Positions 3,401 through 50,953 of a stretch of DNA of 64,000 nucleotides are shown here, one piece after another. A program made the position numbers and the translations under genes. Position 1 is the stretch's first letter, and each line of letters begins with the position of its first letter. The notes under the pieces are model-generated. The model made no database searches and was not told where the DNA came from. It saw only the letters and a list, made by a program, of their open reading frames with translations. Source of the DNA: Entomortierella parvispora E1425 (taxonomy: Eukaryota > Fungi > Mortierellomycota); NCBI GenBank assembly GCA_020891255.1, contig BQFW01000003.1:1364001-1428000 (forward strand), in the 5' to 3' direction.

Positions 3401-4139
3401 GCAATCGAAAAAAACGGCCGCGACTACCGAGGGTAGTGCCGCAAGAAGACAATTAAAGAGGAAGAATTTCAAAGAGAGAAGGGGATGGGAGGGAGAAGAG
3501 ATAACTGGAAGAAACCCGAGGGAAGGAATGTTGGGGACTTACCATTGTCTTTGCAAAGGCCGCAAAGGCCTCCTTGTCCTGAATCGTGAACCCGGTCGAT
3601 TGTAAGATGTCGCCCTTGCCTCCCTTGACATGAACGGGGTCCAAGCTCATCGATCCGATCGTCTGGTCCTCCCAGTGGACCATGATCGTATCCGTGAAGA
3701 TCATCTCTGCTGAGAAGATCTTTGGGATGCCCTTGACCTGGGCCGCGACAGAGACCGTCACAGCGGACTCGCCAGGGTTGGTCATGTTCAGTTGAACGAT
3801 CTCCATTTGAGCGGTATTCAACAGAGACTGGGCCACCTTTGGAATGATAACCAGGATCAACAAGGGGATAAAGATGGCCAAAAAGATCACCGTGCCAATC
3901 GCGCAGGTCACCAAGACCCGCTTACGACGGTAGAAAGGTGGTTGGAGGGGTTTGTGGGCAGAGTCGTATTCGTATTCACGAAAGGATTCGTGTTCGTCCG
4001 CATAGTCGGCGGCGCCTGTGCCCTCCTTCTTCTTCTGGAAAGGCTCTTCATCGCCGGCGACGCTGCTGTACTCTGTCTCGGCCTCGGGATAGGGGAGCTC
4101 GGTATCCTTTTCGTTGACTGAAGATTTAGAAAAAGTCAT
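478..4139 (-). CDS. Single-pass membrane protein with repeated beta-rich luminal modules (DUF3712-like); 3 coding exons approx. 4139-3540, 2603-2492, 2365-478
   Basis: ORF 3453-4139 gives a cytosolic N-terminus, basic RRKR and a hydrophobic helix (VLVTCAIGTVIFLAIFIPLLILVII). It joins via GT-AG introns (first about 0.94 kb) to LSADTFAWTLTSTATLKALGQ and to the 621-aa ORF with recurring 'INNPS..SV..G.' strand motifs. Family assigned from pattern recognition, not a search. Confidence 0.7.
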
Positions 4140-5696
4140 GGTGATGGATCATTAACAGTGAAAGAGTGAAACGAAAGGGGAGGGGTATATGAGATGTCGC
4201 CTGGAAGACCACGCGAGCAGGAAGGGGGTACGGGAGAGGGAGGAGTGGGATTCGATGGATGGGGAACCTCTGGAGGACGGGGGCGAGGAACGGGGGAAGA
4301 GGATGAGGGAGGAGGACGGGAGGTGGATCACTCTGAAGGAACAGCGAGGTTGGTCGAGGGGAGAGAAAACGGAAGAGAAACAGAAAAGAGAAAAGTAAAA
4401 AGACGGGCTGACAGTAATAAGATTGGGCGCCAACGAACATGACCATGGCTATGATGATGCAGGCCGTCGTGCTGTTCTGTAGACGGGGGCCATATCCTCC
4501 CTCCGCCCACTAAAGACGTAGCTGCAAGATCCCGGTTGGGCGAGGGGGCGGTTGTGCAGCAAAGTCCGTTGATGAGAAGGTTGGGTTCACTGGGTTTGGG
4601 TCGCACAACTATTTTTTTTATGTCTTTTCGTCTTGCTCAGCAGCATTCTCTTTGTTCTGTTGAGTTGTTGACAATACGATGCAGTTATCGAGAGCTCACA
4701 GTCAGCCCACAAAAGAAGGAAGCTGCAGGTCTGCACAAGCAACACAGTCGTTAGATGAGCGGGCGAGGGACCAGCGCGTGCAAGTCATTCTCGCCCAAGG
4801 ACCCTGCGTTGCACTGGTGGGACACGCGCAAGAGTGGGCAATAACAAACCTTGGAGCACGCTGTTCTCGATTGAAACGATGCCCAAATATTGTATGATCA
4901 AATTGTCGGCAACATCAACAACAGAGTCGTCCGGGGAAAGAGCAGATAGAATAAGCGGTATTTCAGCAGTGGGGGATACATACATACATGGAGAAAACGT
5001 TGTTTGTTCAAGTACATGTACTCCTCTCCCTCGTGTCTCCTCCCCTGTGCTGAGTTTCATCTCACCTGCACGCCCAATTTCCGTTATCATATTCCAAGAG
5101 TGTTTCTCATGCATCGTCTTGGGGGTACGTTGTGGAAGAGACGCGATGATTTTGCTGCTGTTCCTCCTCACAGTGAGACGAGCTGTGGACTCTCCACCTT
5201 CTCCACACGTCTGCGCTCTTCCCCCTCCGCTCGCTCTCAGTCATCCAGTGACCTTCGGACAGCTCCAAACTCAATTTCCGTCTCTATCCAAGGAAGGCCA
5301 ATTGAGAGCAACCTAAATTTCTCTCGATTGCTTTCCTCCACCCGACAAACTGCAAACTTGCAACAACATCAATCCTCCGTCGGGCTTCCCTACTTTTGAC
5401 GGTTGGTGGCGCTTCGCAGTTCTAACGCAGATTCATAGCATTGCCTTGAGTCTTATTCCAAGCTGTTCACCCTTGAACACCCCTCATGCTATTACCTTTC
5501 AATTCAAAAATTGATATTATTTATTTTTTTTTGGTCAAAAAGAAGAAAATGAGGACGACAACTCCACTTCATCGCCTCGCGTCTATTATGGGGGGATATC
5601 TTGTCTTTTCTTTTTTTGGGTTATGAGGGTGGAACATGAACAGGGTGGAGTGGGAATGAGGTTTTGTTGTTTTGTGCTGCTTTTCTCATTCTCTTT

Positions 5697-7802: not shown

Positions 7803-10800
7803 TCAACGGACAAAAAGCTGATGCATCGCTTCAAACTCGGCGCTGCTTCTCAGGTACACGGCAAGATCTTTCCTTGCTGTCGCTGCCTGGTGTTGCTGGC
7901 TATCGGGTGATCCCACCAATCCAGACATGCCTCCAGGGAAACGGACACGGGCAATGGGTGTTTCCAGCAAGGACAACTAAAAAAAATCATAAGAAAATCC
8001 ACTTAGTAATATGTACTCTCTCGCCACATCTTTTTCTTTCAAAAGAAAAAAGTAGATTTACCTTCTTCAGCTTGGGTGCAGATTGAACAGGGGTCGAGTT
8101 GCGGGTCACCTTGGCCAGGCGATCCTTGAGCTCGTTGCTTCGCTGCTGGATCGTGTTCAGAGCCGCCTGCTGGGTATGGTAGTGCCACTCGGGCTTGCTC
8201 TGTCTCGCCTGCCAGTGTCGACGAGGTGTCGTCGTCGAGGTGGATTCTTCTGTCATTGCAGCACGTGCCGCCGCCAATCCACTCGCAGAGTGCTTTGTCA
8301 GATCCACCACCTTGGGAGAAGCGCAAATCACCCTTGCATCCTTCATCAACCTCCTCGTCTCCAGCGCCACAGCCTTCAACTCTGAATCAGCCGCTGGCGA
8401 CCGCTTCTGAGAGTCTGCATGCGATGACTCCAAAGTCGTTGCCGATCCCTCCTTCTTTTCTTCCTCCTCGTCTCCTTCAAGGTTTCTTCTCGCCAGGGGG
8501 CCTCCTCTCAACTCGGAAATGTCAGCCGAGACTCCAAGGTCCTGCATAGCCGCCCTTGTCCTCAACAAGCTGTTCTCAGAACGCAAATAGCGCAAGGCAG
8601 ACCTGAGAGATTCGATCTGAACCAGCAGCTCCCGAGGCAACACCAGGTCGGCTCCGTCCTGTCCAGCACTGGCGTCCTCCTGAGTATGCCCTGCTCCAGT
8701 ATGATGGTGACCAGGGTGGGAGATCCGCTTTGGCACTGGAATGATACCAGGGCGATCAGGCTTCTTGGGATGACGTCTCAATTGGGCGTTCTCGGCTTCC
8801 AACTTGGCCATGTCGGCCTGAAGCGAGCTAATGAGTTCGTCGTATTCACGTTCCTGCTTCTTAGCCTTCTCTACATCAATATCTAAAATCGAGATTTGCT
8901 CCGTCTTCTTCTTGAAATTCTCGACACGCTTTTCAAGATGGTCAATCCTGAGTCCAGACTCCTTAAGTGCTTCATCCTACAGGCATAGCGATCAAAAGAC
9001 GAGGTTAGTATTAAACAGTTTTGAAGTTGAGACTTTCTGTTGAAATAATAGCTAGAAGACGGCTTTACCTTCAATTTAGCTTCCTTCACGAGTTTCAGGA
9101 CCTGATCCTGTAGCGACTGGGCCTTTTGCTCCGCGTCAGTGTTGACAATGACTTCTGCCTTCATCTCCTTGGCTCGCTTGATCCAGACCTTGTCAGGCTT
9201 GGTCACTACAGAAAAACATCACCCAAAAACAATATAGGCCGTTAGAAATCAACAGTAGGTATTGAAATTCGTTATGACCCAAAGGATCAATCCAGAGGTT
9301 GGAAAAATCCAGACTCCAGCTTACCCTTGACAGCAATATCAGATTCCATGATGCTCTCGGCTAATGCAGTAATGTCCTGCAACAATCCATTCAGCATCTT
9401 GCGACAGCCGTCCCACATGCCACTTTCGCTAATGCCAAGGTATTGATCCGTGACACTGTAGATGGTTTGATGAAGCGACTCGGTCTTGGAACCCTCCCGT
9501 CGGGCACGAACATAAAGGGACAAATGCTTCGTGATCTCATGTGTGAACTCGCCCAACTTGGTGCTCAGCACACAGGCGTTCCTGTACTGAGAGAAGAGCT
9601 CTGGCTTGACAACAGATGCCTGAGAAGCAAGTTCGTCCATCCTTCTCAAAATTTTTCTAGATTTACATATAATATGGCCCGTTAAAAAGCAATTTTCAAA
9701 AAAGACAGCGGATCAAACTTGCTATTATTACATGCAATAAACATCAAATCTTTACCTTGTAGTAGATTTTCCGGTCTTTGCCTGAACACCAAGGTTCTTG
9801 ACGGCTTGGATGAGTTGGAACTGAATTTCGTCCGTATCCGTCAAGCGCACACCATCCTCACTCGACTTGAACATGGTCACCACGGCTGACAGGTTGACAG
9901 ACACGCGGTCAAAGTTCAATTCCAGAGCATGAACCGCTCCTTGGTATCGGTCCACAAGGTCCAGCTTGGTGTTGATCAAATAAGTCTCTGTGAGGTGATC
10001 CATTTGTGCGATGGCTCGCTGCAAGTCCACGATACAGTCTGATTCCTTGAGCTCCTCCTTTCTCAAAAGCCCAACCCAAGTATCCAAACGACGTTCCGTT
10101 CCCAAGAGATCGTGGTAGACCTGACCCATCTTGGCAAAGACGTCAACGGGACAACCCTCGATATAGGAAACGAATCGCTTCGCCAAGTCGCCGAACCAAG
10201 TCAATTTCTGTCGAACCTCGCAAATTGGGACCAGTTCCAAAGGAACAACGCCCTGGGACATCTTTTCGGAAAGGCTGTGCTGCTGCTCCAGATGCTTGTT
10301 CATCAGCTCTGCCTTGAACGACAACCGCTTGAACAAGAGCAAACACTGGATCGAATCGTTCTCCGTCCTGAAGAAACCGTCGGGGAGGAAAGGTTGGACC
10401 AACATCAAGTTGTCAGTGGCCTGGCTGGCATCCAACTTACGAAGCTCCAAATCGATCGCTTTGGCTTGAGCTTTCATGGCCGTCTTCTCGAGCTGCATGA
10501 GGAGACTCAACATTTCCTGCGAATGACCTCCAGTGCCTCCTGTAACTTCCCGCTGACGCAATTGCTCCAGCTCGCCTTGCAGATGAGCAACCAGCTCACG
10601 GAACTTCAAAATCGTGTTTTCGTAATCACCAATGTTCTCTTCCAGAGTCTCAATCTTACGGAGCTGATCTCGGAGCTGACTGTCCTTGATGGTGATCTCA
10701 GCCTGGAGTTGCTTCTCTGTCTCGCTGTGGTTCTCCTCCAGCTCGTCGTTGAGCTCCTTGAGAGCCTCTAGATCATCAATGGCGCTCTGCATTTCTTCAA

Positions 10801-12764
10801 TCTTCTCGCTCAAATTGATGTTCTTTTCCGAGAGCTGCTCGATCGTGTCCTCTGCATCGACGGCATCGTCCAATCGCTGCTTCAGATCCTCGATCTGACC
10901 CTCGGCGATATCCAAGCACTCCTTAAGTCGTTCATTTTGCGCTTGGACTTCCTGCATTAAGGACGCTTCCTTCTCCAAGTTTTTAAGCTTGCTGTTCATC
11001 TCTGCCTTTTCCTCGTTAGTGATCTCCCGGAGTCTGTCATCATAAAACAAATCGCATTGTTAGTCCAAGTTTTTATGGAATAATTCGAGCACACATTTGG
11101 GATAGATGAATTGACTTACTTGAAAAGAGCCTCTCTAAGACGTTCGATTTGTCGCTCCAGCTGGACTTGACTGACTGATGGATTTCCTGCGTTGCCTGCA
11201 CAAAAAATAACAGCACCGATAAAAAAAATGTTGGTCAGCACCCCTTGCACATCTGCACATCTTGTCGCTTTGTGCTACATTCACACACACACGCGTCCTT
11301 GCGCATGCACAGCATGTGATATTTTGTCAACAAAATCATTTTTCGGCCGGGAAAGAAAAACACCTTACCATCGTCGTGCTGCAACACATCCAAGTCAACA
11401 TGCATCTCATCCACCTTTTCTTTCAACATGTTGACCTCATGCTGCAGGTTCTCGGCCTTTTCCTCGGCCATCTCCTTGTCCAGGACGGCAACCTCCATCG
11501 AGTCGGCCAAATCATTGTACTTGGACTCGAACAGATCTCTCTCGGCCACGGCCTCCTTTGCGCTACGTTTGGCTTCTCGCACTTCCTGCTGGAATTCAGC
11601 CAACTTGGCTAGAGGCACAAAAATAAAAAGGATAAAAAATAAGCCAGTGATTCTCCCAGTTTCACCGCCGAATGAACGATATCAATATTGCTCGGATTTT
11701 TCCATTGTACCTTGCAGCTTTGTTCGATGGCTCAAGAACTGCTCTGATTCCTCCTTGACCTTTTCCGCCTCCCGAAGCTTCTCTCTGTCCTCGGCACGCT
11801 TAGTCTCGAGGATGCGCAGCTTGATCCGGAGTTCATCATACTCTTTCACTGGCACCATAGCCTCCATTCGATGAGCAGGGCCCATGTTGGCAGAAAGACC
11901 AGCGCTAGAAGATGACGCAGAGAGGGGCGCAAATCCTTGCTGCTGCTCTCGTTGCAATTGATCCTGAGCAAGCGCCTCCTCTTCTTGTTCAAGCTCCAGT
12001 TGCAGTTGTCGCTCCTGTGCCAACATCTCCTCGTTCTCCTCAGGAGTCAATGAAACGTCTCGTTGGTGTTGCTGTTGCTGATGATGCTGCTGTTGGTGCT
12101 GCTGGATGCCAGACGATGAAGTTGGGGTACTGGATCCTGATCGCTCGTTAGCAACATGATGATCTTCGTCACGCTGTGCCTGGGGTGCAACTCTGGTCCG
12201 TCTCGCTGGTGACTCTGGTGCATGGTCGACTGTCCTCCTCACAGGGGGTCGAGACAACCTCGATGCAGCAGAAGAAGGGGAAGAGGCTGTACCTGGAGCG
12301 GTCGCTCTGGTAGAGGATGGTCGACCTGCTGGCAAACTTTGGCGGCTGGCGAGAGAGGTGGAGGAGCGACTGGCTATACCAGAGGCAGGTCGGGTGATGC
12401 GCCTTGTAGACTCAGCCTGATATATATAAAAAAAAGAGAATTGTAAGAAAGTCATTCATGCATGCATCTTTGTACTTATGCCTCTATCCACTCACACAGT
12501 CCATACCTGAGTAGTGCCGTCTTGCACAATGCGGACTTGCGAGGGGCGAACAAAAACGCCATGGTCGGGCTTGCAGTCAAAGTAGCGCCTGTCGTTGACC
12601 ACGCCCGAGTTCTTTCCTCTCGGCAAGTCTAGTTCAATACCGACCCAGCGGCCAGAAGCAAAGGAGGTGGTGCCTGCATGACGAACATAGCCAAGATTGC
12701 CGCCAACCTCAACCCTAGTGCCGAGGTCAATGTCAATGGGGAGTGTTCCTGAGGAGTCCGCCAT
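7803..12764 (-). CDS. DCTN1: Dynactin subunit 1 (p150Glued/Nip100), multi-exon
   Basis: N-terminal CAP-Gly (GRWVGIELDLPRGKNSGVVNDRRYFDC..HGVFVR), basic Ser/Arg linker, long coiled coils (LEALKELNDELEENH) and the dynactin domain (LLLFKRLSFKAEL). Last exon ends ...MHQLFVR* at about 7803. Confidence 0.95.
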
Positions 12765-14108
12765 GAGGGGAGGGACAAACAGACGCGTTAATGTAGCGTG
12801 TAAGGTGTGGGTATGATGATTGAATGAATGGGAGAGTAAGGAGAATGAATGAATGAAGCGTCAGATGGGTGAAGAGGATGGAGGGAAGAGAAAAAGAAGA
12901 GATGAATGATGAATGTTGACTACACACAACAGATGAGTGAGCCCTGCTCTTCTTCATGCCAGCCATGCTCTCTCCATCGCAATGTCAGCTCGTGACTTGA
13001 TTCCACGCCTCTTCGCTCCCACGCGGCACGCGTGCGTGCCTGAAAACTGGACTTTTCTCGTCGTTTTTGTCTCATTCTCGCAAGTGATGCTCTTTTGGTG
13101 GACATCCTCAGATTGTTCTCTGTTGACATTGTTCCTGCTAATGCGGCCAAGCACAGGTGCTCTTATGGTTTCTGTTATGTTGGCCGCACCAGGAGCTCTC
13201 GCACTCCAATTTTTTATTGTGTATCAGCTTCCAACATGAGGGCCGGTGGCAGTATTTAGTGCAGCAATATGTTCCTGATGACTGTCGTCAAGATGAATAT
13301 AGAAAACCCACTGGAGAGAGAGAAAGAGTTATTATCGACTCCCGAGGAGCTTGCTGGAGATGGACAACACCTGTCACAGAAGAGGAGCCATCGCGAATCT
13401 TCGTTTTTAAGAGATGAAGGGTCCTGGCAGGTAACTGCTTGTTGTTTGGAGTAGGTTCAAAAAACTCGATGCGTCTTACATGGTTGCCCATCGGGAATGA
13501 TCATAATCATCGGCTACTCTTCAGCTGGCTTTCAAGTTCTGAAGAGACTGTAGTTACACGATCAGAGCAAATAAAGGCCCATGATTCATGCTCTTTGTCG
13601 ACGCCACATGTTCGCCACTGGCACGTTCGAAAGGTTTCAAGGATCTCCAACAAGCTGGGAGATAGGTTCTGTAATTGTGGAATTGGCAGTAGCAGCAGTT
13701 ACTCTACAAAAAAAATGGAACAAATATTAATAAACAGCAATAAAGAGAGACAGACAAGATGCATCAACGGGCAGCGCGGGTCATTGAGCTCCATCCCAAC
13801 CGGTCAATAAGATGCTATGATTGCTACTTTACAATAACGAGTACTGGGCCAATGATTCATTGGTGGTCAGTTAGGAATGGATGGAGACGATAACACTCTA
13901 CACTCTGATAGCATCAGCCGCTTGGGATCGCTCCAGTTGACGGGCTTCTGGAGATGACAGAAGATCCGGTACTTGTTGACTTTCGCTAACTGACTGATAC
14001 TGTCCAGAAGCCTTACGAGACTGAATCGGAACTCTTGCCATTACATCTATGAAAGGCTGGATTCCTGACTTCCATGGCGTCGAGATAGAGTCCTCTTGAC
14101 CACTTGGC

Positions 14109-14645
14109 CTACACCCATTCGTACATATGTGCACCGTCTCGCATTCTACTGAGATCAAACTGCCCACTCTACGGTAACACAACAACTTAAAAAGAGTCGG
14201 CCGTGCACGCTCTTGTTGGAGGAGGACGGTGTTGCCTGGTATTTCACATCGAGCCAACACCTTGCAGGTGTGCGGACCAAACCGCACCGTTTTGAGAAAG
14301 AGCATAGGAGTTGCCCACAACACAGGTTGCCTCTTAAATCCCCATGTTGTTCTATTCCTGCGCCAAGTCGACGGACAAGAGAACACCACTTTGTTGTTGT
14401 TGTTTCTGTCTTTTTTTTTTTTTTTTTTTGTTTGTTTTGTTGCTTGATCAAGTATTTATTCTCATCATCTATAGAGGCTATGTGTTCTGTGGGCCTTGTC
14501 GTCTTGGCTCCTGGGGATCTGCTCACTTGGTCCCGTTTCTTGAAGACTGGCTTGTCGGATCTGTTCTTGAGGACCTGTCCCTATTAAGACTCTTGCCAAA
14601 GAGGAGAGAGGGGGGAGGGAAGGGGAGGGGAGGGCGACTTACCAT
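14109..14645 (-). other. Putative spliced micro-ORF MSGQFDLSRMRDGAHMYEWV* (ATG 14645-14643, intron 14642-14169, exon 14168-14109)
   Basis: ATG|GTAAGT donor and TGTGTTACCGTAG|AGTGGG acceptor-like site on the minus strand; no expression evidence. Confidence 0.3.
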
Positions 14646-15864
14646 ATCATCATATCATAGCATCACATCATTCATATCATCAAGAGACCAGCATAGCATC
14701 CATACATCATATCATCAAGCAACCGAGCATAGCATTCATACAGCAAGTCATCAAAACTCAACATAGCATGCAAACATCAAGTCATCAAGCAACAAGTCAT
14801 CATATCCAACATAGCATTCATACATCAAGACATCATACATCAAGCATTCATACATCAAGACATCACACATTAAGGCATCATACATCAAGGCATCATACAT
14901 CAAGGCATCATACATCAAGGCAACATACATCAAGTCATCATATCCAACATAGCATTCATACATCAAGGCATCAAGGTATCAAGGTCATCTAAGCGGTGGG
15001 CAAGAACGAGAGTTTTGGTGAGAGCAAGGTTCGTTTCGTTGAGGAGACAGACTGGGAAGAGAGGGGGAAGACTGGAGGCAAGAGTATTAGGGGGAAAAAA
15101 GCAGGAAAAAGAAAAAGGTGAAGGTGTTAGCGCTGAAAGCCGGAAACGAGAGAAAAGAGAATAGCAGGCGGTCGGACAGGAAGGGGCAAGAAGGGCGAGT
15201 GAGGAACTGGTTGCGAAGGAAGGAAAGGTGTTGGAGAGGTATGGACAGCTGCGGAGAGAGTGTGGGAACAGTGGATGGGTGTTGGGGCATGGTGGTGTGG
15301 AAAGGGAAGTGGAAGGGTGAAGAACAGAAAGGAAAAGGCGAAAAGCGAAGCAGATAAAGGCAGGCCACACGCACGCACGCACGCACGCAACGTCAGAGGA
15401 AGGCGGCAACATCGTACAGGCTTCGCTGTTGCTGTTGACTGGGAGGGAGATAGCGGAGGAGATAGGGAGGGAGAGGCAGAAAGAAGACATGCGGAAAGGA
15501 CCGAGGAAGAGAGAGAGAGACGGACGGACGGATGGACGGACACACGGGATTGACACGAACTGATCAAACTCTTTTTTTTTTTTTTTGGCTTTTTTTTCTT
15601 CGGGGGAGGTCCCTTCATTTGACTGGCAAGACGACCGGGAATCTGAAGTAGGAGTGAAGATTGGAAGAGAAGATGGAGAAAGAGCAGCTGGAGCAGGAGG
15701 AGGGTACAGTGTCTGCGGTGTCTGCGTTACTGATCTGTCATGAATATTGGAAGAGAAAGAGAAAAAGGGAGAGAAAAAGGGAGAGAAAGAGACATTTCTT
15801 GGACAAGCTTGATTATGGAGCAGAGTACCCTTCCTCTCTTCTCTCTCCTGAGGACACGCTTCGC
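14194..15864. repeat. Left arm of a long inverted repeat (1671 bp)
   Basis: Reverse complement of 16110-17780. The ORF track shows mirrored identical ORFs (14751-14966 minus = 17007-17222 plus; 14768-14992 plus = 16981-17205 minus). The only differences seen are four 1-bp homopolymer indels. Confidence 0.97.
14643..14988 (-). repeat. Minisatellite (TTGATGTATGATGCC-like units, mostly 15-21 nt), left copy
   Basis: Tandem CATCATACATCAAGG-type units on the plus strand. Confidence 0.93.
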
Positions 15865-16109
15865 GTTATGACCATCAGCCTTCTTTCCGCTGCTTGACAG
15901 ACATTGTCGATGTTTGTGGTCCCTTCAAGTTAGAAAGAAATGACAGCTATTGAGTGTGAAGCGCCAGAAGAAATAGAGGTGAGAGTTCTGGACCATGTAT
16001 CATTGTCATTTCGTCCTTGATCATAAAACAGGCTCAAGTTCGTGGCTACCTTTACGTTTTATTGACAATATCGGCACCTTCCTTCGTTTCTTCTCTCTCT
16101 CCTGATGCA

Positions 16110-17780
16110 GCGAAGCGTGTCCTCAGGAGAGAGAAGAGAGGAAGGGTACTCTGCTCCATAATCAAGCTTGTCCAAGAAATGTCTCTTTCTCTCCCTTTTT
16201 CTCTCCCTTTTTCTCTTTCTCTTCCAATATTCATGACAGATCAGTAACGCAGACACCGCAGACACTGTACCCTCCTCCTGCTCCAGCTGCTCTTTCTCCA
16301 TCTTCTCTTCCAATCTTCACTCCTACTTCAGATTCCCGGTCGTCTTGCCAGTCAAATGAAGGGACCTCCCCCGAAGAAAAAAAAGCCAAAAAAAAAAAAA
16401 AAGAGTTTGATCAGTTCGTGTCAATCCCGTGTGTCCGTCCATCCGTCCGTCCGTCTCTCTCTCTCTTCCTCGGTCCTTTCCGCATGTCTTCTTTCTGCCT
16501 CTCCCTCCCTATCTCCTCCGCTATCTCCCTCCCAGTCAACAGCAACAGCGAAGCCTGTACGATGTTGCCGCCTTCCTCTGACGTTGCGTGCGTGCGTGCG
16601 TGCGTGTGGCCTGCCTTTATCTGCTTCGCTTTTCGCCTTTTCCTTTCTGTTCTTCACCCTTCCACTTCCCTTTCCACACCACCATGCCCCAACACCCATC
16701 CACTGTTCCCACACTCTCTCCCGCAGCTGTCCATACCTCTCCAACACCTTTCCTTCCTTCGCAACCAGTTCCTCACTCGCCCTTCTTGCCCCTTCCTGTC
16801 CGACCGCCTGCTATTCTCTTTTCTCTCGTTTCCGGCTTTCAGCGCTAACACCTTCACCTTTTCTTTTTCCTGCTTTTTCCCCCTAATACTCTTGCCTCCA
16901 GTCTTCCCCCTCTCTTCCCAGTCTGTCTCCTCAACGAAACGAACCTTGCTCTCACCAAAACTCTCGTTCTTGCCCACCGCTTAGATGACCTTGATACCTT
17001 GATGCCTTGATGTATGAATGCTATGTTGGATATGATGACTTGATGTATGTTGCCTTGATGTATGATGCCTTGATGTATGATGCCTTGATGTATGATGCCT
17101 TAATGTGTGATGTCTTGATGTATGAATGCTTGATGTATGATGTCTTGATGTATGAATGCTATGTTGGATATGATGACTTGTTGCTTGATGACTTGATGTT
17201 TGCATGCTATGTTGAGTTTTGATGACTTGCTGTATGAATGCTATGCTCGGTTGCTTGATGATATGATGTATGGATGCTATGCTGGTCTCTTGATGATATG
17301 AATGATGTGATGCTATGATATGATGATATGGTAAGTCGCCCTCCCCTCCCCTTCCCTCCCCCCTCTCTCCTCTTTGGCAAGAGTCTTAATAGGGACAGGT
17401 CCTCAAGAACAGATCCGACAAGCCAGTCTTCAAGAAACGGGACCAAGTGAGCAGATCCCCAGGAGCCAAGACGACAAGGCCCACAGAACACATAGCCTCT
17501 ATAGATGATGAGAATAAATACTTGATCAAGCAACAAAACAAACAAAAAAAAAAAAAAAAAAAAGACAGAAACAACAACAACAAAGTGGTGTTCTCTTGTC
17601 CGTCGACTTGGCGCAGGAATAGAACAACATGGGGATTTAAGAGGCAACCTGTGTTGTGGGCAACTCCTATGCTCTTTCTCAAAACGGTGCGGTTTGGTCC
17701 GCACACCTGCAAGGTGTTGGCTCGATGTGAAATACCAGGCAACACCGTCCTCCTCCAACAAGAGCGTGCACGGCCGACTC
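16110..17780. repeat. Right arm of the long inverted repeat (1671 bp); degenerate similarity extends to 17826 (left partner 14164)
   Basis: Inner junctions ...GGACACGCTTCGC (15864) and GCGAAGCGTGTCC... (16110); outer junctions GAGTCGGCCGTGCAC (14194) and GTGCACGGCCGACTC (17780). Confidence 0.97.
16985..17330 (+). repeat. Minisatellite (TTGATGTATGATGCC-like units), right copy
   Basis: Tandem ttgatgtatgatgcc / ttgatgtatgaatgc / tatgttggatatgatgac units. Confidence 0.93.
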
Positions 17781-17893
17781 ATTTTGAGTTGAATTTGTTT
17801 TGCTTTGCTGTGTTACCACAGAGTGGAGACGAAGTCCAGTCGTCCAAGGTTTACTGCTATGCATCAATTTGTATTGCCGAGAATATACTTTGA
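17328..17893 (+). other. Putative spliced micro-ORF MSGDEVQSSKVYCYASICIAENIL* (ATG 17328-17330, intron 17331-17821, exon 17822-17893)
   Basis: ATG|GTAAGT donor and TGTGTTACCACAG|AGTGGA acceptor-like site; no expression evidence. Confidence 0.3.
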
Positions 17894-18283
17894 TCTCTCC
17901 ACGCGCGCCTTCTATCTCTTGGAGTCATGAAAACGACGTTGATCTCTGCTCGCTCTGTGCAGCCGTCTTTTTTTTTATTTGGTCAGCCGTCTTCTACTCT
18001 CACCCATCGAGTCTCCACATGCCTCGGACAACTCGCTTGTATAACTCTTCAAACTCGGCCACGTTTTCTTTTGGTTGTTTTTTTTTATTCACGCTTTCAC
18101 CTAGATAAATAATATGGGATCCGCTAGATCAACTAGCTTGTAAATTGACTGCTGGAGTGTGGCCCTGCCATCACCCAGTGGGGGAGGTTATTTTTCTTGT
18201 CATTATCATCGGCTTAGGGGGAGGGATAACCATTTGACCTCGAACTTCCAGAGGACTTTCGGATCAAACGAGAAATCCAGTCT

Positions 18284-20399
18284 CTACTGGTAGAGGTGGC
18301 GACGACGGCGGGTGCTGGTGCAGGCAGATCCCTGGACCCAGACCGAATTGGATCCGGGGGTATCGCCCTGAGTCCACCATTGAGCGGTGTAGAGGTAGCC
18401 TCCATAGGTCACGGTCGCTCCGCTGTTGTAAGCCGTGCTCGAGGACCAGGCAGTGGAACCTCCACAGCCGCCGGGAGCATTCGTGGGGCTGGAACCACCA
18501 CAGGCACCGTTGTCAGTCCAGGGAGCTCCAGCGGTGGGGACATTGTTCTGAGACCACCACTGGGCGGTGTACTGGTGTCCGTTATACGAGACAACGGCGC
18601 CACCGTTATAGGCAGTGGTAGCCGACCAAGCTGGAGCTGTGCACGCACCGCCGGGAGCAGAGGTGGTGGTCGTGGGAGGGGCGTTGGTGGTCGTGGGCTG
18701 GGCCTGCGTGGTGGTCGAAGCGGGAGCGGTCACAGTGTTGGTCACGGTCACGGTAACGGTGGCAGAGGGGGAGGCTCCACCGCCAGGTTGAGGGATGGAG
18801 CCAGAGCAGCGAGCAACATTACCAAGAGCGGCCGCGCAGATCTGCTGAGCGGCGCTGGTTGCATCGACGTTGGTGGCGGCACCGGCGGGCTTGTACATCT
18901 CCCAGAAGAATCCACCGTTGGCACCCTGGACGGACAAGATGCTGGTGAGCTCGGACTGGATGAGGGGCAATTGATGGGTGGGGTCGTGGGTGGGATCTGG
19001 GTAAGCGGGGATACCAATCTCATAACCGACATGGGCCGACATGCCGTTGGCTGTGTACGAGTTAACGTAGTAGTTGACCTGCTCGCTGAGAGTGCAGGTG
19101 TTGGCATCGGGGCACTCATAGTACTGCTCGTTGTCAGACAGATCGTAGGTCATGATGTTGACACCACCGCCGTTGGCGACGAAGTTGTATGCATCGGGGT
19201 ACCAGGCGTGCATGTTGTACCAGATGTTCTTCAGGTTACCGCCCCACCAGGATGTGGAGAGACCACCAGCAGCGGAGGCGGCCGTGGCGAGCAACAACGA
19301 GGGCTGGATAGCCTGGATGTTGATTTGAACGTCCTTAATGATAGCAGTGTACTTGTAGACGGTCTGGTGAGAAGTCCATGGACCAGCAGAAGGACCGTTC
19401 CTGTAGTAATCAGCATGCCACATCTCCTCGTAATCTGAATGGAAGAAATAGAACAGGTTGCCAAAGGGGCAGATGAGTTAGAATATGTTGTATTCCCGTT
19501 GACAGCACTTTATTCCGCTTTGTGAGCTCTTACCAATATCGACACCGGTCAATCCGAGATCCTTGGCCAGGTAGACCAAATCTTGGTAGGGGTCACGGTT
19601 CTGAGTGAGAAAGTAGTCGCTGCCGGGGACGGTTAAGACCATACTGTTGTTGGTATCAGTCCAGCTGCGGCCTAATAATACGAAAGAACTCATCATTAGT
19701 CTTCTGCACCTACAAGCTTTCAACAAAGGGATATCGCCAAAGAAAGCAAAAAATAGATCCACACGTACCAGGAATCATCTGAGGATGCCAAACGACTCCG
19801 TCACCGCCAGCGGTGGCCTCGACATAGGTCTGAGCTTGTTGCCAGGTCGCTGAGTTGGAGGGCTCAGGAAAGATATCGAAATCGGCCAAAGTCGTGTTCT
19901 GGCTTGGGGGCTCGCAAGTGTAGCACCACATGTTGGTCGCTGTGCAGTTGGACAAGGTACCATACTCCTGGATCTTGTAGTAGTTGGGGGTGGATGTACC
20001 GTAGCCTCCGACCGAGTAGTAGGTGTAGGGATAGGGGAAGCATCCATAGTTCCAACCACCGACTGAGAGGAAGACCTGGACCCCACCGGCTTGGAGAGTC
20101 GCCACCTTGGCCTTCAAATCGGCGAAACCGTAGTCGGCCGTGTTGGCATAGTTCAATCCGACGTACTCCAAGGTGTTCGAGCTTGGGACGTAGACCATAT
20201 CAGGGCGAGCAAAAGCTAAAAAGACACGGTTCACAGGGATGCTGGCCGCGTTGTCGGCAAGGGCCTGGAGCTTGGAAGGACCTTCAATGGGGTCCAGCAA
20301 GAGATAACCACCAACAATATTGGAGGTGGCGGCCCCGACGGCGTTGCAAGCCAAAATGAGGGCCGAAGCGACCGACAGAAGTGTAGCTTTCAAAAGCAT
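18284..20399 (-). CDS. Secreted GH18 chitinase with Thr/Pro linker and two C-terminal CBM5/12 (ChtBD3-type) modules; 3 exons
   Basis: Signal peptide MLLKATLLSVASALILAC; VFLSVGGW (SxGG motif); spliced LGLTGVDID|YEE (DxDxE); two modules AWSATTAYNGGAVVSYNGHQYTAQWWS and AWSSSTAYNSGATVTYGGYLYTAQWWT. Confidence 0.9.
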
Positions 20400-22682
20400 T
20401 GGGAAGCGGTAGGGTGGAGGAGGGAAGGGGAGAGCTGTGTGGTGGTGGAAGAAGAGCTTGAAGAAATGTTGGATGTCCCAATTACGTCTGGTATTTATAC
20501 TCATCTACCATTTTTTTTTAAAAAAAAAATATAATGTACCCATCAATTGAACTGAAGATATTGAGAAGAATAGAGACCCTGGTCGTGAGAATGGTAAAAG
20601 ATCCGACAATCTAGGACCCTGATAGTAGAGAAACGATGACAAAGAGACAACAAGAGCTGAGGAGCTGACAGGGATCAAGCTCTGACCTTCATCATTAAAT
20701 GAGCCGTTTTTTACAAAGAAAGGCGACTCTGCAGTTCTGAGGAAACACAATCGATCGCTGACAGAGTCACCCTGAGGACCGAGGGGACACAAATTAGTTT
20801 GAACTTATCCGTGGAAACGGTAGAAAACATGCTCCGTGGCCAGGTGTGGCAAAAGCAAAAGCTTGTTGTTGGTTGTACATGCCCGTTTTTTGCCATGGTC
20901 ATTGTTTTTTGGTTACTCATTCGGGTCTGGGCAACACCAGTTCATCAAGGACCTGTGCGGCTAGAGATATTGTATCAGTTGTTGTTTTCCTTTTCTTGTG
21001 GTCCAACGCTTTTTACGCTCTAGGATCTTTTGTTGACAACGGAACAACCTATTCACATCGGCCATCGATATAAGCGTTATGGCCAAGGAATGATGTTGAC
21101 CCACAAAGGAAGATTATGCGAGATAGTGCACTGGTCTCCAACCTCTCCTCCTGAACCATAGCCATTTCTACCTTGCCATCAATTGTCAACCGTAGATTGT
21201 CAACAAAGAGAAAAACAAAGGAGAAAAAAAAGCCAACCGTTCTGCTGCCATCCATCAATTGCACCTTGCTCCTATTGCTTTCAGGACCCATCATCTTTCT
21301 TAATACCAGTAGCGGCAATTTTCCAAAATTGCATTGAGGAATTGCACAGAAATTAACGACGGTCAGGCACAAGGACAAAGTGTCAGGTAACAGCGGGTAT
21401 TATTCCATTATGAACAGCCAGTGCGTGGCGCCTTGGGCCGTTCCTTACTTTTTCCCTTTACCCATCCGCTCATTTGTGCGTCGCTGCAATTATATTGAAC
21501 CAGTAAGGAAGTAGACTAAAGCGAAATGTCGGGCACAACAACAAGCACAAAATCAATCACACGCGTTTGTTTCGCGAAAAGGGTGAATTGTGGCCACATC
21601 ATGCAGAGAAACAAGTTTTTGGGGCAAACATGGGTCTTGTTGTTCACGCGAGCCCACCCAATCAGAGAGCACGATCCTGGGGAGGCGAACCGTGCCCATC
21701 CCCTTGTGCCTGAACGATGAGGGGGGCACGATGGATGCGGTTGCAGATAGTTTGGGAGAGGGAAGAGCGAGTGCAACCGATCTTTGATCACGGTTTGGAA
21801 AATGGCCCTTGGCGTAGACTATTCGGCAGGCAACCACTGTCAACATGAGAGCCAGGGACAAACACGACTAAACCCTTGACAATAATAATGCCAAGTAAGT
21901 CTCTGATTTTTTTTTTACTTTGGGAGGCAGCTCCTTGTGGGAAAAAGAGGTATTGATGATTGAGCAAACACAAAGTCTGTGGACAACAAGGGGGTGAATT
22001 GGGAAGAGACCATTTCTGAACCGTGGTCAATCACTTGACATGATTATCCACTATCGGAAAAGATCTATTGGGTTGTCCGTGTTGACATTCGTTTCCGTCC
22101 ACAACCGTTGTGTTACCCACGGCGCTGATATTTTTCATGCTTATCTGCAGGGCCTAATATCTCATCCGTGGGGCGCACAATGATGGCAAATGGCGCTACG
22201 TTCTCATTCATTGTTCTCTCAAAGAGATACTACACCGTCTTGGAGAGCTTTCATTCTTGTCATTGACAACCATTGCAAAGGGCGTAGGCGACAAAAGGGG
22301 GACTACGGCTTTCATTGTCGAACCCAAGCATGCGTAAATATATCCTATCAGATCCAACAAATGCACAAACGCGATACCTACACCAAACAAAATGGACTCA
22401 ATCGGGTGAATATCTCTTGTGCCTCGACAATGTCATCACGGTACATAGATGTGCTCTGCGGTTATGATTGTGACCCTGCCCTGCGGGGTCAGGTGGTCTT
22501 GCACAGGCAACTCCAGGCGTCAAGTTGGACCATCGTTAAATTGAGATCTACTAGCAGGCACAAATGTGCGCCGCTCGGGTGCACGTCCACCCCCCCCATA
22601 TTCGACCACAAAATGCAAAAATGATGAGAATTGTTTATTGGTAGGGTGCAAAGGCAGTCAGATATAGGACGGGGTCTTGCTT

Positions 22683-24886: not shown

Positions 24887-26284
24887 TCAATAAAAGTCAT
24901 CTACAAAGAGGTGAACCTTGGCCTTCTGGTGACCGTTCTTCCACTCGTTGAATTTGCGCACCGTCTGGTCTGAGATGTGTTGGTCGTGTTCGAATGCGAC
25001 CGCATAGTTTCCCAGGATATAGTCTGTCGAGAAGCTGCCTCGGTAAAGATTAATACACTCGAGAGCTCCCTGTGAACCCTGGAAGGCCAAGTCCCAGAAA
25101 AAAAGTGCCGGACTGAACTCGGGGACCTCGTAGATGTCAATGATCTTGAGATTTTTAAAGTCGCGGAAGGCTTCCATCACGAGCTTTAAGTCATCTCGCT
25201 GTGAGTTGATTTGCTTGTAGGTAAGAGTGATACGCTCGAGAGCATTGCACTTGTTGGACAGGAGCTCCAGAAGCGGAAGACCAAACCTGACCTTGTCACA
25301 GCGATGAAGCTCGAGCTCTGTCAGGGAGGTACTGGAGCTGGATTTCGCGATCCATTCCAAGGCCGAGTCTGTGATTTGATTGCACTCGCCCAGGCACAAC
25401 TGCTTGATCCCTGGACAGTGTTTTGCAACGGCAAGCAAAGAAATGTCGGTGATCTTTAGATTACCTGTCAATTTTAACACACGAAGGTTCCGCCGACAGA
25501 ACTTTGCTACGGCAAAGAGCCCAAGGTCCGTCACAAGTCTGCAGTAGGAAAGGTCAAGGGTCTCGAGGTATTGGCACCTATCGACAATGAGGGCCAAGGA
25601 CGTGTCTGTGACACCCGATGTCCCGGATAGATTCAGAGTGACAAGGTTGGGGAAAAAAGTGGGTAGGGATTTGATGCCAGGCTCTCGAATATCTGTGCAG
25701 GAACTCAGGTCCAAGCTTTCTAGTCCAGGATGGACAAAGGTACCGAGTTTGCGGAATGTCTGAGTCTGCACAAAAGGAGACGATGTCTTCTTGCCAGAGA
25801 GGCAGAGATATTGAAGCTTTGGCGCGCTTTGGAGGAGGGTCAGGAGCCACGTGTCCGGCAAGGTCGTGTACAGGGTCTCTTCGACCGAGGACATATCTAG
25901 ATAATTAATCATCTCTGCGGTCTCGGGGCGAAGGGACCGGTTGGTCATAGTTGTCAGGATCGATTGGATGCATTGAAGTGGCGTGAAGACAAAGCTATTG
26001 CTGAGCTGAGGCGACTTCCATAGCACTGGCATCACTGCTTGGTAGCACTGTTGGGAGTAAGCAAGAGACAGAAGGTTAGAGAGGTTAGAGTTGATGGGTT
26101 CGTCTGGGTGAACCAGGAGGGAAGGAGACGAGGTAGCACAACGACTTGCCTCGTGGTTGACCAAGCACAGAATCGCTAAGGTCTCGTTTGTGAGGGGAAT
26201 GCGCCTGACGACGATGGCGAGTGCATCGGGGAACAGTGAGAAGAATGATGGCGGCGCCAGCTGAGAGAAGAAGAAGTCGTCCAT
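24887..26284 (-). CDS. Cysteine-containing leucine-rich-repeat protein (RNI-like, FBXL/AMN1-like)
   Basis: Repeated LxxLdLSxCxxITDxxL units (LETLDLSYCRLVTDLGL, LKLTGNLKITDISL); degenerate F-box-like segment LAILCLVNHEASRCA; likely start MDDFFF at 26284. Confidence 0.8.
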   Translation of the reverse strand: MDDFFFSQLAPPSFFSLFPDALAIVVRRIPLTNETLAILCLVNHEASRCATSSPSLLVHPDEPINSNLSNLLSLAYSQQCYQAVMPVLWKSPQLSNSFVFTPLQCIQSILTTMTNRSLRPETAEMINYLDMSSVEETLYTTLPDTWLLTLLQSAPKLQYLCLSGKKTSSPFVQTQTFRKLGTFVHPGLESLDLSSCTDIREPGIKSLPTFFPNLVTLNLSGTSGVTDTSLALIVDRCQYLETLDLSYCRLVTDLGLFAVAKFCRRNLRVLKLTGNLKITDISLLAVAKHCPGIKQLCLGECNQITDSALEWIAKSSSSTSLTELELHRCDKVRFGLPLLELLSNKCNALERITLTYKQINSQRDDLKLVMEAFRDFKNLKIIDIYEVPEFSPALFFWDLAFQGSQGALECINLYRGSFSTDYILGNYAVAFEHDQHISDQTVRKFNEWKNGHQKAKVHLFVDDFY

Positions 26285-26493
26285 TGCAGGCGTGAAGGTG
26301 CGGGTGATTTGGAAAGACAGGGAGAGACAATGTAGACTGGAGTAGGGTAGGGCCAGGAGTAAGAGGGTAAGTGAAGGTGAGAATATGCAGAAAACAGGAA
26401 CGAGAGCAAAGGAAGGAAAGAAGGAAGGAAGAAAGGGGTGGATGTTCAAGGATTAAAGGAAGAAGAAGAAGGGACGAAGTAGAAGGGCGGAAC

Positions 26494-26549
26494 AAGGAAA
26501 GAGAGGAAGGAAAGAGAGGAAGGAAAGAGAGGAAGGAAAGAGAGGAAGG
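26494..26549. repeat. Tandem repeat, 4 copies of AAGGAAAGAGAGG
   Basis: Directly visible, in the divergent promoter region between the LRR gene and VPS8. Confidence 0.9.
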
Positions 26550-26771
26550 GCGGGAAGCAACAGAACAGGCGTGAGACAGCGAAGAGTCGACACAGAAAAG
26601 ACGTCTGTCTTGACAGCATTGACGAGTATGAGAGCAACGGTGGCATGGGTGGACTGCATTCCTTCTGCTGTCGACTCTTTCCTCCCCTCCGATTCGATCC
26701 TCATTGGCGCCACCTTTTTCTTTCCTTCTTTCCTTCTGTCCCTCTTCCTTCCTCAAAGGAGGGTTGTCCTG

Positions 26772-38200: not shown

Positions 38201-38446
38201 TGAAACAGAGTGAGACGAATAAGCACAAAACGACTTGGGTTCAAGTTTACAGCGCAGAAGGTTTGCGGGGGAAAGAGGTGAAAGGGTGCGGTTCTCTTCG
38301 AGGCGCATCTTTGTCGCTGTTGAGGTAGGGGGTCGGAAAAGATGCGCAGAAGACAGAGAAAGAGAAAAAGAGAGCTGCAGGGAAGAGAGCTTGAGAGATA
38401 GGGAAATGAATAGAGTGCAAATCCTACCTTCGATCTTTTCAGACAT
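35202..38446 (-). CDS. PMA1: Plasma-membrane H+-ATPase (P3A type); short exon 1 (MSEKIE) then intron to about 37930
   Basis: DQSALTGESLP, CSDKTGTLT phosphorylation site, KGAPQVI, MITGD, TGDGVNDAPALK, AAIPVGLP. Confidence 0.97.
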
Positions 38447-50346: not shown

Positions 50347-50953
50347 GGTAATAATAAAACGAATGAGAAAGCGTGAGGTAATAAAATCCGTTGAAAGTCC
50401 GTTGTCCGTTGTTCCTTCCTGTCCTGTTTGGTGCGGCGCTGCTCTTGAGGTGAAGACGGAGAAGAAGAAAAGGAAGCGAGGCGACAAGAGTAGGAAGCAG
50501 CCCAGTTTACAACCGGAACCGCGGTTGGCTGCGTGCAACTGGCAAGAGAAACAGAGACAGTCACAGGGCAAACCGCGCTCTTTCTCTTTTCTCGTAACCT
50601 CTTCTTTCTTGTCTCCTCCTCTTCCTTCGCTGCCGTTCAGACCTCTTTTTCTCTTTCCGTCTCTTGCATTATCACTGCTTCGCTGTTGTTTCTTCTCCTT
50701 TCGTTACTCATCTCGTCCATCCTGAGTTTTCTAGGGGTTGACCTTTGCCTTTCGCGTCGTCTTCGGACTTTTGTCCAACTCGTGCCTGCTTCCATTCTCG
50801 TCTTCTTGGTTCTCCCACCCTTTCTGTTCCTCTCCTCAGTCATCAACTTCGAACGAAAAAGATCCTTTTCCTCCCTTTTGACCGATCTACCTCTCTCTTC
50901 CTTCTCCTTCTCCCTCTCGCTCACACCCTAGCCACCCAAGCCCTGCTTATTCC

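What the first reader, a model, noticed from the sequence alone, without database searches (positions are those of the whole stretch)
14164..17826. 3.6-kb quasi-palindrome with near-identical 1.67-kb arms and decayed outer margins
Seen: the arms 14194-15864 and 16110-17780 flank a unique 245-bp spacer. In spot comparisons by eye they differ only by four 1-bp homopolymer indels: T19 vs A20 (near 14411/17544), A6 vs T5, A5 vs T4 (near 15095-15115/16860-16878) and GG vs CCC (near 15253/16720). No substitutions were noticed. Beyond the identical part, about 30-45 bp of gapped, substituted similarity persists to 14164/17826. No transposase or TSD was seen. Inference: identical cores with diverged edges suggest an older inverted duplication homogenised by arm-to-arm gene conversion, and the indels may be unpolished sequencing errors. 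Possible roles: twin divergent transcription unit, hairpin/endo-siRNA source, foldback-like element or cruciform. IR-flanked centromeres are known in Komagataella, but the gene-like composition here argues against that.
Basis: partly seen in the sequence, partly recalled or inferred. Interest (0 to 1): 0.85.

Follow-up and report, generated by a model that had tools for sequence, protein, structure and literature searches.

The report
Non-coding 3.6-kb intergenic palindrome, fungal
Between two ordinary genes of the soil fungus Entomortierella parvispora lies a real 3.6-kb mirror-image duplication of non-coding, promoter-like DNA whose two halves are kept effectively identical; it is a known kind of structure with no demonstrated function.

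Summary
Arms 14194-15864 and 16110-17780 (1,671 bp each) flank a unique 245-bp spacer. They differ only by four 1-base homopolymer length changes and have no substitutions. A diverged inverted-repeat margin reaches 14164/17826.

The window is contig BQFW01000003.1 of Entomortierella parvispora E1425, a Nanopore assembly polished with Illumina reads. The palindrome lies in the 5.5-kb gap between the stop of a GH18/CBM5_12 chitinase gene and the start of the dynactin p150 gene.

The arms gave no protein family, no Rfam family, no tRNA, no target-site duplication, and no other copy in the 64-kb window, a paralogous locus or three related loci.

Each arm carries an 880-bp strand-biased pyrimidine tract like those upstream of genes in this window, oriented outward, then a 15/36-nt minisatellite.

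Best reading (0.55): a real local inverted duplication, homogenised by arm-to-arm gene conversion. The indels are probably unpolished Nanopore errors.

Unchecked notes of this scan list similarly built palindromes on other contigs of this genome, so a dispersed family remains open.

It is a new member of a known kind, of modest interest.

The parts
14164..14193 (.). left decayed outer margin of the inverted repeat
   Evidence: Aligns to the reverse complement of 17781-17826 with 4 substitutions and 2 indels. The local score was reached by 1 of 2000 shuffles.
14194..15864 (.). left arm, 1,671 bp
   Evidence: Identical to the reverse complement of the right arm except for 4 homopolymer indels.
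15865..16109 (.). unique 245-bp spacer, GC 0.43
   Evidence: Its halves are not inverted repeats. Its right end (about 16075-16105) is a degenerate direct copy of the CT-rich inner end of the left arm (2 of 2000 shuffles), which creates a small local hairpin at 16090-16139.
16110..17780 (.). right arm, 1,671 bp
17781..17826 (.). right decayed outer margin
14986..15864 (-). left-arm strand-biased tract, 68% purine on the + strand and so pyrimidine-rich on the outward (-) strand; promoter/leader-like composition
   Evidence: Similar tracts of 400 nt or more lie directly upstream of gene starts elsewhere in the window.
16110..16988 (+). right-arm mirror of the same tract, pyrimidine-rich on the outward (+) strand
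14648..14973 (.). left-arm minisatellite (15-nt unit x 12.9, 36-nt unit x 3.9)
   Evidence: Copy number and sequence are identical to the right-arm array.
17000..17325 (.). right-arm minisatellite
17011..17223 (+). 70-aa CDS in the deposited annotation, lying wholly in the minisatellite; annotated in the right arm only; probably not a real protein
   Evidence: No homologue was found and no Pfam family.
17331..17398 (+). intron-like segment on the outward strand (GTAAGT ... CAG); its mirror is 14575-14642 on the - strand
   Evidence: A single donor of this kind is about what chance gives in 1.7 kb, so this is weak evidence.
17513..17518 (+). AATAAA on the outward strand, 25 nt before the A20 run; its mirror is 14455-14460
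   Evidence: about chance expectation.
17544..17563 (.). A20 run. Its mirror is T19 at 14411-14429. With the T15/A15 runs at 15572-15586 and 16388-16402, these are four of the six homopolymer A/T runs of 14 nt or more in the window.
18284..20400 (-). flanking gene: GH18 chitinase with CBM5_12 domains (EMPS_02483). Its 3' flank is conserved in a relative down to 18063.
7987..12765 (-). flanking gene: dynactin p150 (CAP-Gly, Dynactin), start codon at about 12765; the low end shown is the lowest large exon-like ORF, and the annotated gene runs further left

Best explanation
This is a genuine, lineage-specific inverted duplication (palindrome) of about 1.7 kb of non-coding DNA, in the intergenic gap between the chitinase and dynactin genes of E. 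parvispora E1425.

Shown: two 1,671-bp arms with no substitutions; a unique 245-bp spacer; a short diverged extension of the repeat at both outer ends; no coding, transposase or known RNA content.

Inferred: the duplication is older than its identical core suggests. The arms are kept identical by intrachromosomal recombination (arm-to-arm gene conversion, or double-strand-break repair using the other arm). Such repair cannot reach the last tens of bases, so the edges drift apart. The four homopolymer differences are most likely Nanopore errors that short-read polishing could not fix in a two-copy repeat.

Each arm has the make-up of a gene 5' region of this genome: an 880-bp pyrimidine-rich leader or promoter-like tract followed by an ATG-rich minisatellite, facing outward. 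The structure is therefore best described as a head-to-head twin of a promoter-like segment.

Expected consequences, none of them shown: inversion of the spacer by crossover between the arms; a 1.67-kb-stem hairpin RNA if any transcript reads through.
For: - **Structure:** exact structure and differences.
- **Margins:** significant diverged outer margin next to a perfectly identical core.
- **Unique flanks:** both flanks are unique and ordinary. The chitinase side is syntenic with a 79%-identical relative up to 18063. The dynactin start is at about 12765.
- **Non-coding content:** no Pfam, Rfam or tRNA hit, and no protein homologue for any arm ORF.
- **No transposon signs:** no TSD and no second copy in the window or in loci L001, L006, L007 and L010.
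- **Sequencing errors:** the assembly method explains homopolymer-only differences (PMC8759367).
- **Recent homogenisation:** minisatellite copy number is identical in both arms.
- **Promoter-like tracts:** strand-biased pyrimidine tracts of the same kind lie upstream of the F-box/LRR gene, the P-type ATPase gene and other gene starts in the window, always pyrimidine-rich on the sense strand.
- **Short-read support:** a short-read-sized Logan contig set of the same sample holds 91% of the sampled 31-mers of 13200-18800.
Against:
- Gene conversion is inferred from one 30-46-bp margin only. The inner edges show no comparable decay.
- No orthologous palindrome was found. The nearest relative available has unrelated sequence beyond the chitinase 3' flank, so the age of the duplication is not measured.
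- Unchecked notes of this scan list palindromes of very similar size on other contigs (arms 1.45-1.77 kb, spacers 238-248 bp). That fits a dispersed family better than independent local duplications.
Confidence: 0.55

Rival explanations
1. It is one copy of a dispersed palindromic element: a foldback-like or long-TIR non-autonomous DNA transposon, or another multi-copy palindromic unit. It would have inserted between the two genes.
For: - The arms contain internal tandem subrepeats, as foldback elements do.
- Unchecked notes of this scan report non-coding palindromes of nearly the same geometry on other contigs of the same genome, and long-TIR transposons there.
- The relative's orthologous 3' flank lacks the sequence.
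Against: - No TSD of 5 bp or more at any plausible end.
- The outermost 30-46 bp are the least conserved part, whereas transposon termini are normally the best conserved.
- No transposase and no second copy in 64 kb or in four other loci.
- Two exact-match scans of metagenome contigs found nothing.
Confidence: 0.2
2. It is a functional RNA locus. Either it is two identical outward-transcribed short non-coding (or micro-peptide) genes sharing a central control region, or it is a read-through hairpin RNA that feeds the RNAi pathway.
For: - The pyrimidine-rich leader-like tracts are oriented outward in both arms.
- One GTAAGT...CAG intron-like segment and one AATAAA lie on the outward strand.
- The deposited, RNA-seq-hinted AUGUSTUS annotation places a small CDS on the outward strand of the right arm.
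- A read-through RNA would form 1,669 arm-to-arm pairs.
- An unchecked note reads another palindrome of this genome the same way.
Against: - The splice and poly(A) signals occur at about chance frequency.
- The 70-aa CDS is a translated minisatellite without homologues.
- No structured RNA signal was found except in the repeat array, and no Rfam hit.
- No RNA data could be examined.
- The chitinase gene has its own AATAAA about 200 nt past its stop, where conservation with the relative ends. Read-through into the palindrome is therefore not implied.
Confidence: 0.12
3. It is an assembly artefact of Nanopore foldback or chimeric reads.
For: - The assembly is Nanopore-based.
- Foldback artefacts make up about 0.55-0.6% of ONT genomic reads (PMC12870357).
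- The homopolymer-only differences show that the arms were polished poorly.
Against: - Foldback artefacts fold within about 200 bp, symmetrically about the read midpoint, and mirror everything beyond the fold. Here a unique 245-bp spacer separates the arms and both flanks are different, ordinary, gene-bearing sequences.
- The right flank carries a diverged copy of the left margin, which no artefact would create.
- Coverage was x409, so rare chimeras should not win the consensus inside a 1.86-Mb contig.
Confidence: 0.05
4. It is an inverted-repeat centromere of the Komagataella / Candida tropicalis type.
For: - The geometry is similar: near-identical 1.7-kb arms around a unique core, with unexceptional base composition, as in K. 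phaffii (PMC5010909).
- I know of no description of Mortierellomycotina centromeres (my own knowledge, not searched here).
Against: - The core is 245 bp against about 1 kb.
- The gene-free interval is only 5.5 kb, between two housekeeping-type genes.
- Unchecked notes suggest many more such palindromes of varied size than a one-per-chromosome rule would allow, and list gene-free transposon nests of over 53 kb as better candidates.
- The arms look promoter-like, whereas K. phaffii centromeres are transcription coldspots.
Confidence: 0.03

Closest known systems
Arm-to-arm gene-converting palindromes of primate and mouse sex chromosomes (e.g. PMC8981503, PMC8600007; listed)
   Same: Two inverted arms of more than 99% identity around a unique spacer. 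Identity is maintained by intrachromosomal conversion.
   Different: Those are 10 kb to Mb in size, carry protein-coding gene families and are conserved between species. This one is 3.6 kb and non-coding, and no orthologous copy was found.
Inverted-repeat centromeres and MAT-locus inverted repeats of Komagataella phaffii (PMC5010909)
   Same: About 2-kb virtually identical inverted repeats flank a short unique middle. Base composition is unexceptional. Recombination between the repeats flips the middle.
   Different: There the structure occurs once per chromosome, binds Cse4 and is not transcribed, with a core of about 1 kb. None of this is shown here, and the core here is 245 bp.
Foldback-type DNA transposons (Drosophila FB, Arabidopsis FARE, long-TIR MULE derivatives); recalled from my own knowledge
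   Same: Long inverted arms with internal tandem subrepeats, a short non-coding middle and no transposase of their own.
   Different: No TSD, the termini are the least conserved part, the subrepeats lie mid-arm rather than at the ends, and no other copy was seen.
Hairpin-RNA (inverted-repeat) endo-siRNA loci, e.g. the palindromic siRNA loci described in budding yeasts with RNAi; recalled from my own knowledge
   Same: A long perfect inverted repeat with a short loop would give a Dicer substrate if transcribed through.
   Different: No transcription or small-RNA evidence, and the arms match no known gene or transposon that could be a target.

Membership tests
Gene-converting genomic palindrome | Two inverted arms of at least 99% identity around a unique spacer, embedded in unique flanks | tested here: met
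Gene-converting genomic palindrome | Arm identity higher than the age of the duplication allows (decayed edges, or an orthologous palindrome in relatives) | tested here: inconclusive
   The outer margin is diverged next to a 100%-identical core. No inner-edge decay was seen and no orthologous palindrome was available.
Foldback / long-TIR DNA transposon | Target-site duplication flanking the inverted termini | tested here: not met
   No direct repeat of 5 bp or more at any end within -24/+35 bp (left) or -51/+23 bp (right) of the extended repeat ends at 14164/17826.
Foldback / long-TIR DNA transposon | Multiple dispersed copies with conserved termini | not testable with these tools
   None in the 64-kb window or in L001, L006, L007 and L010. 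The rest of the genome could not be searched. Unchecked notes mention look-alike palindromes.
Foldback / long-TIR DNA transposon | Arms built of tandem subrepeats | tested here: inconclusive
   The 15-nt and 36-nt arrays occupy 345 bp in the middle of each arm, not the termini.
Inverted-repeat centromere (K. phaffii type) | Near-identical inverted repeats around a unique core in a non-transcribed gene-free region | tested here: inconclusive
   The geometry is similar, but the core is 245 bp against about 1 kb. Transcription was not testable.
Inverted-repeat centromere (K. phaffii type) | Exactly one per chromosome; binds the centromeric histone | not testable with these tools
   Notes suggest many palindromes in 19 contigs. 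No ChIP data.
Hairpin-RNA / endo-siRNA locus | A single transcript through both arms, and small RNAs from them | not testable with these tools
   No RNA run was listed. The fold alone shows 1,669 arm-to-arm pairs.
Long-read foldback assembly artefact | Fold point with little or no unique spacer and mirrored sequence beyond it | tested here: not met
   There is a unique 245-bp spacer, two different gene-bearing flanks and a diverged margin. The criteria come from PMC12870357.

The most novel reading that the evidence does not exclude
This palindrome is one member of a genome-wide class in E. parvispora. The class would consist of head-to-head twins of short promoter-plus-transcript units with a shared geometry (arms of about 1.5-1.8 kb, spacers of about 240 bp). 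It would be kept by selection, for example as hairpin or twin non-coding RNA genes, or as structural chromosome elements, and would not be inert duplications.
Probability: 0.12. Interest if true: 0.65.

Novelty: new member of a known kind. Interest (0 to 1): 0.3.

Why it matters
On its own it is a well-documented example of a small, non-coding palindrome in an early-diverging fungus. Its identical core and decayed edge point to ongoing arm-to-arm homogenisation. It also marks a place where the deposited assembly probably still carries four homopolymer errors and one spurious 70-aa gene model.

It would matter more if the similarly sized palindromes noted on other contigs prove to be related in sequence or in expression. 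That would define either a new foldback-type element or a class of twin RNA genes in Mortierellomycotina.

Tried and rejected
- **Read evidence:** No RNA run was listed.
- **Protein content of the arms:**
  - Exact look-ups of two arm ORFs found nothing.
  - The annotated 70-aa ORF occurs at one place only.
  - Homologue searches with the 191-aa and 70-aa ORFs found nothing.
  - A full HMMER search with the 197-aa ORF gave only three low-complexity hits with E above 1e-5.
  - Pfam on ten ORFs gave nothing above cut-off.
- **RNA content:** the Rfam E-value scan gave only sub-threshold miRNA-like hits at the small junction hairpin. There are no tRNAs. A sliding-window fold z-score flagged only the minisatellite.
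- **Other copies:** two exact-match metagenome scans found nothing.
- **Synteny:**
  - The 79%-identical metagenomic relative (L001-L003) loses all similarity at 18063. It shows no inverted repeat in its 2.6-kb tail.
  - More distant species (L006, L007) and the paralogous chitinase locus (L010) have other neighbours and no palindrome.
- **Rejected readings:**
  - CACTA-like or other terminal motifs with a TSD.
  - A microhomology origin at the spacer/right-arm junction; inspection by eye of the junction sequences found that the expected junction sequence is absent, and the only similarity there is a CT-rich direct repeat.
  - Splice and poly(A) signals as evidence of a gene, because they occur at chance frequency.
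Full report
**1. The observation**

- The arms are 14194-15864 and 16110-17780, each 1,671 bp. The spacer is 15865-16109, 245 bp.
- The arms differ at four places only, each a 1-base change in a homopolymer:
  - T19 against A20;
  - two A-runs near 15095 and 15112, each one base longer in the left arm;
  - GG against GGG-equivalent near 15253.
- There are no substitutions.
- Outside the identical core, 14164-14193 still aligns to 17781-17826, with 4 substitutions in 30 aligned bases and two indels of 14 and 2 nt. A local alignment of the 100-bp outer flanks reaches a score met by only 1 of 2000 shuffles.
- The two halves of the spacer are not inverted repeats of each other (707 of 2000 shuffles).
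- The arm has no other copy in the 64-kb window.

**2. Where it is**

The adjacent ORF is 100% identical to EMPS_02483 of Entomortierella parvispora. Its locus is contig BQFW01000003.1 of GCA_020891255.1, which is 1.86 Mb long. By the locus coordinates returned, the window starts at about base 1,364,001 of the record.

The palindrome lies in a 5.5-kb intergenic gap.
- On one side is the stop codon of a GH18/CBM5_12 chitinase gene (18284, minus strand).
- On the other is the start codon of the dynactin p150 gene (about 12765, minus strand; its first exon is a CAP-Gly domain).
- The deposited annotation places only one gene model inside the gap. It is a 70-aa CDS at 17011-17223 (+) that is a translated minisatellite, and it is annotated in one arm only.

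**3. Real or artefact**

The genome was assembled from Nanopore 1D reads (Canu correction, SMARTdenovo), polished with Nanopolish and Pilon, at x409 coverage (PMC8759367). Foldback artefacts make up about 0.55-0.6% of ONT genomic reads. They fold within about 200 bp, near the read midpoint, and mirror everything beyond the fold (PMC12870357).

The structure here does not fit that pattern.
- A unique 245-bp spacer separates the arms.
- The two flanks are different, ordinary sequences. The chitinase side is colinear with a 79%-identical metagenomic relative up to 18063.
- The right flank carries a diverged copy of the left margin, which no artefact would produce.
- A Logan contig set of the same sample, whose size suggests a short-read assembly, holds 91% of the sampled 31-mers of 13200-18800.

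I could not obtain read-level proof. I put the artefact reading at about 5%.

The 0 substitutions : 4 homopolymer indels ratio, together with this assembly route, makes it likely that the four differences are residual Nanopore errors in a two-copy repeat. Short reads cannot be placed uniquely there.

**4. What the arms contain**

Nothing recognisable as a gene or a transposon was found.
- No Pfam family above cut-off in ten ORFs of arms, spacer and flanks.
- No homologue for the 191-aa, 197-aa or 70-aa ORFs in two very large protein collections.
- No Rfam family near its threshold and no tRNA.
- No unusually stable local RNA fold except in the repeat array.

Reading outward from the centre, each arm consists of:
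- an 880-bp tract with strong strand bias, 68% purine on one strand, so pyrimidine-rich on the outward strand;
- a 345-bp minisatellite of 15-nt and 36-nt units;
- one GTAAGT...CAG intron-like segment (17331-17398; mirror 14575-14642);
- one AATAAA, followed 25 nt later by the A20 run;
- 217 bp of complex sequence.

The splice and poly(A) signals occur about as often as chance predicts in 1.7 kb, so they carry little weight.

The strand-biased tract is more telling. I scanned the window for 400-nt stretches with at least 66% strand bias and found six outside the palindrome.
- Five of the six lie directly upstream of a gene start, and each is pyrimidine-rich on that gene's sense strand.
- The genes are the F-box/LRR gene, a P-type ATPase gene, and the ORFs starting at 4139 (-) and 51860 (+).
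- The last 100-200 nt before the dynactin and chitinase starts show the same bias.

Each arm therefore has the composition of a gene 5' region of this genome, pointing outward. The palindrome looks like a head-to-head twin of a promoter or leader-like segment. This rests on composition only; no transcript was seen.

**5. Transposon tests**

- No direct repeat of 5 bp or more abuts any plausible pair of repeat ends.
- The outermost 30-46 bp are the least conserved part of the repeat, which is the opposite of what transposon termini show.
- There is no transposase.
- Two exact-match scans of metagenome contigs with arm sequences found nothing.
- The nearest relative available (L001-L003) has unrelated sequence after the conserved chitinase 3' flank, with no inverted repeat in its remaining 2.6 kb.
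- More distant species and the paralogous chitinase locus of E. parvispora itself have different neighbours and no palindrome.

The sequence is thus lineage-specific at this site, which both a local duplication and an insertion would explain.

I could not search the other 18 contigs. Unchecked first-reader notes of this scan list non-coding palindromes of very similar dimensions on other contigs of the same genome: arms of 1.45-1.77 kb and spacers of 238-248 bp. One note reads each arm of another palindrome as an outward-transcribed, spliced, polyadenylated non-coding gene. These notes are leads, not evidence. They are the main reason I keep a dispersed family at about 20%.

**6. How it most likely works**

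The abrupt step from complete identity over 1,671 bp to about 13% substitutions plus indels in the adjoining margin cannot come from uniform divergence. The mutation-prone minisatellite also has the same copy number in both arms.

It fits an older inverted duplication whose interior is repeatedly copied from one arm to the other. The copying could be gene conversion or break repair that uses the other arm as template. Such repair needs homology on both sides, so the extreme edges escape it and drift. The same logic is applied to sex-chromosome palindromes (papers listed) and to the K. phaffii centromere and MAT repeats (PMC5010909).

Crossover between the arms would flip the 245-bp spacer. From my own knowledge, a spacer of this size makes cruciform or hairpin extrusion, and the resulting breakage, much less likely than in spacer-less palindromes. 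That may be why the structure persists.

If any transcript reads through both arms, it would fold into a stem of 1,669 pairs. The chitinase gene, however, has its own AATAAA about 200 nt after its stop, where conservation with the relative ends. Read-through is therefore not implied.

What is shown: the structure, the identity pattern, the lack of coding, transposon or RNA-family content, and the genomic setting. What is inferred: conversion, error status of the indels, promoter-like nature, and every functional consequence.

**7. Centromere reading**

K. phaffii centromeres are 2-kb near-identical repeats around a 1-kb core. They have ordinary base composition, occur once per chromosome, bind Cse4 and are not transcribed.

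The reading is still unlikely, for these reasons:
- the core is 245 bp;
- the gene-free interval is 5.5 kb;
- the arms look promoter-like;
- the scan's notes point to more palindromes than chromosomes;
- those notes also list transposon nests of more than 53 kb as better candidates.

**8. Verdict**

This is a real, non-coding, 3.6-kb intergenic palindrome. It is a new member of a known kind of structure, probably homogenised by arm-to-arm conversion, and has no demonstrated function. Interest is modest (0.3). It would rise if the look-alike palindromes elsewhere in the genome prove to be related or expressed.

Noticed in passing
window 17011-17223 (+): The deposited annotation has a 70-aa CDS that is simply one open frame of the 15-nt minisatellite (repeating ...DALMY...). 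It is annotated in the right arm but not in the identical left arm, and it has no homologue. It is probably a spurious gene model.
   Followed up: partly
window 4001-4600, 26001-26700, 37951-38900, 50501-51850: Long (600-950 nt) strand-biased pyrimidine tracts lie immediately upstream of gene starts, pyrimidine-rich on the sense strand. The longest precedes a P-type ATPase gene. This looks like a general feature of 5' regions in this genome.
   Followed up: partly
window 53709-53735: A T27 homopolymer, the longest in the window. Such runs are likely places for residual Nanopore length errors.
   Followed up: no
L001:10650-13037 (metagenome contig of a 79%-identical relative): Similarity to E. 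parvispora stops about 220 bp after the chitinase stop. The following 2.4 kb is unrelated to anything in the window and does not contain the dynactin gene. Gene order thus differs between the two species exactly at the palindrome's position.
   Followed up: partly
window 16090-16139: The right end of the spacer repeats the CT-rich inner end of the left arm in degenerate form. Together with the start of the right arm it forms a small hairpin with a stem of about 11-16 pairs and a 17-nt loop. This accounts for the weak miRNA-like Rfam hits.
   Followed up: partly
window 18653-18694: A 21-nt tandem direct repeat lies inside the GC-rich Thr/Pro-rich linker region of the chitinase gene.
   Followed up: no
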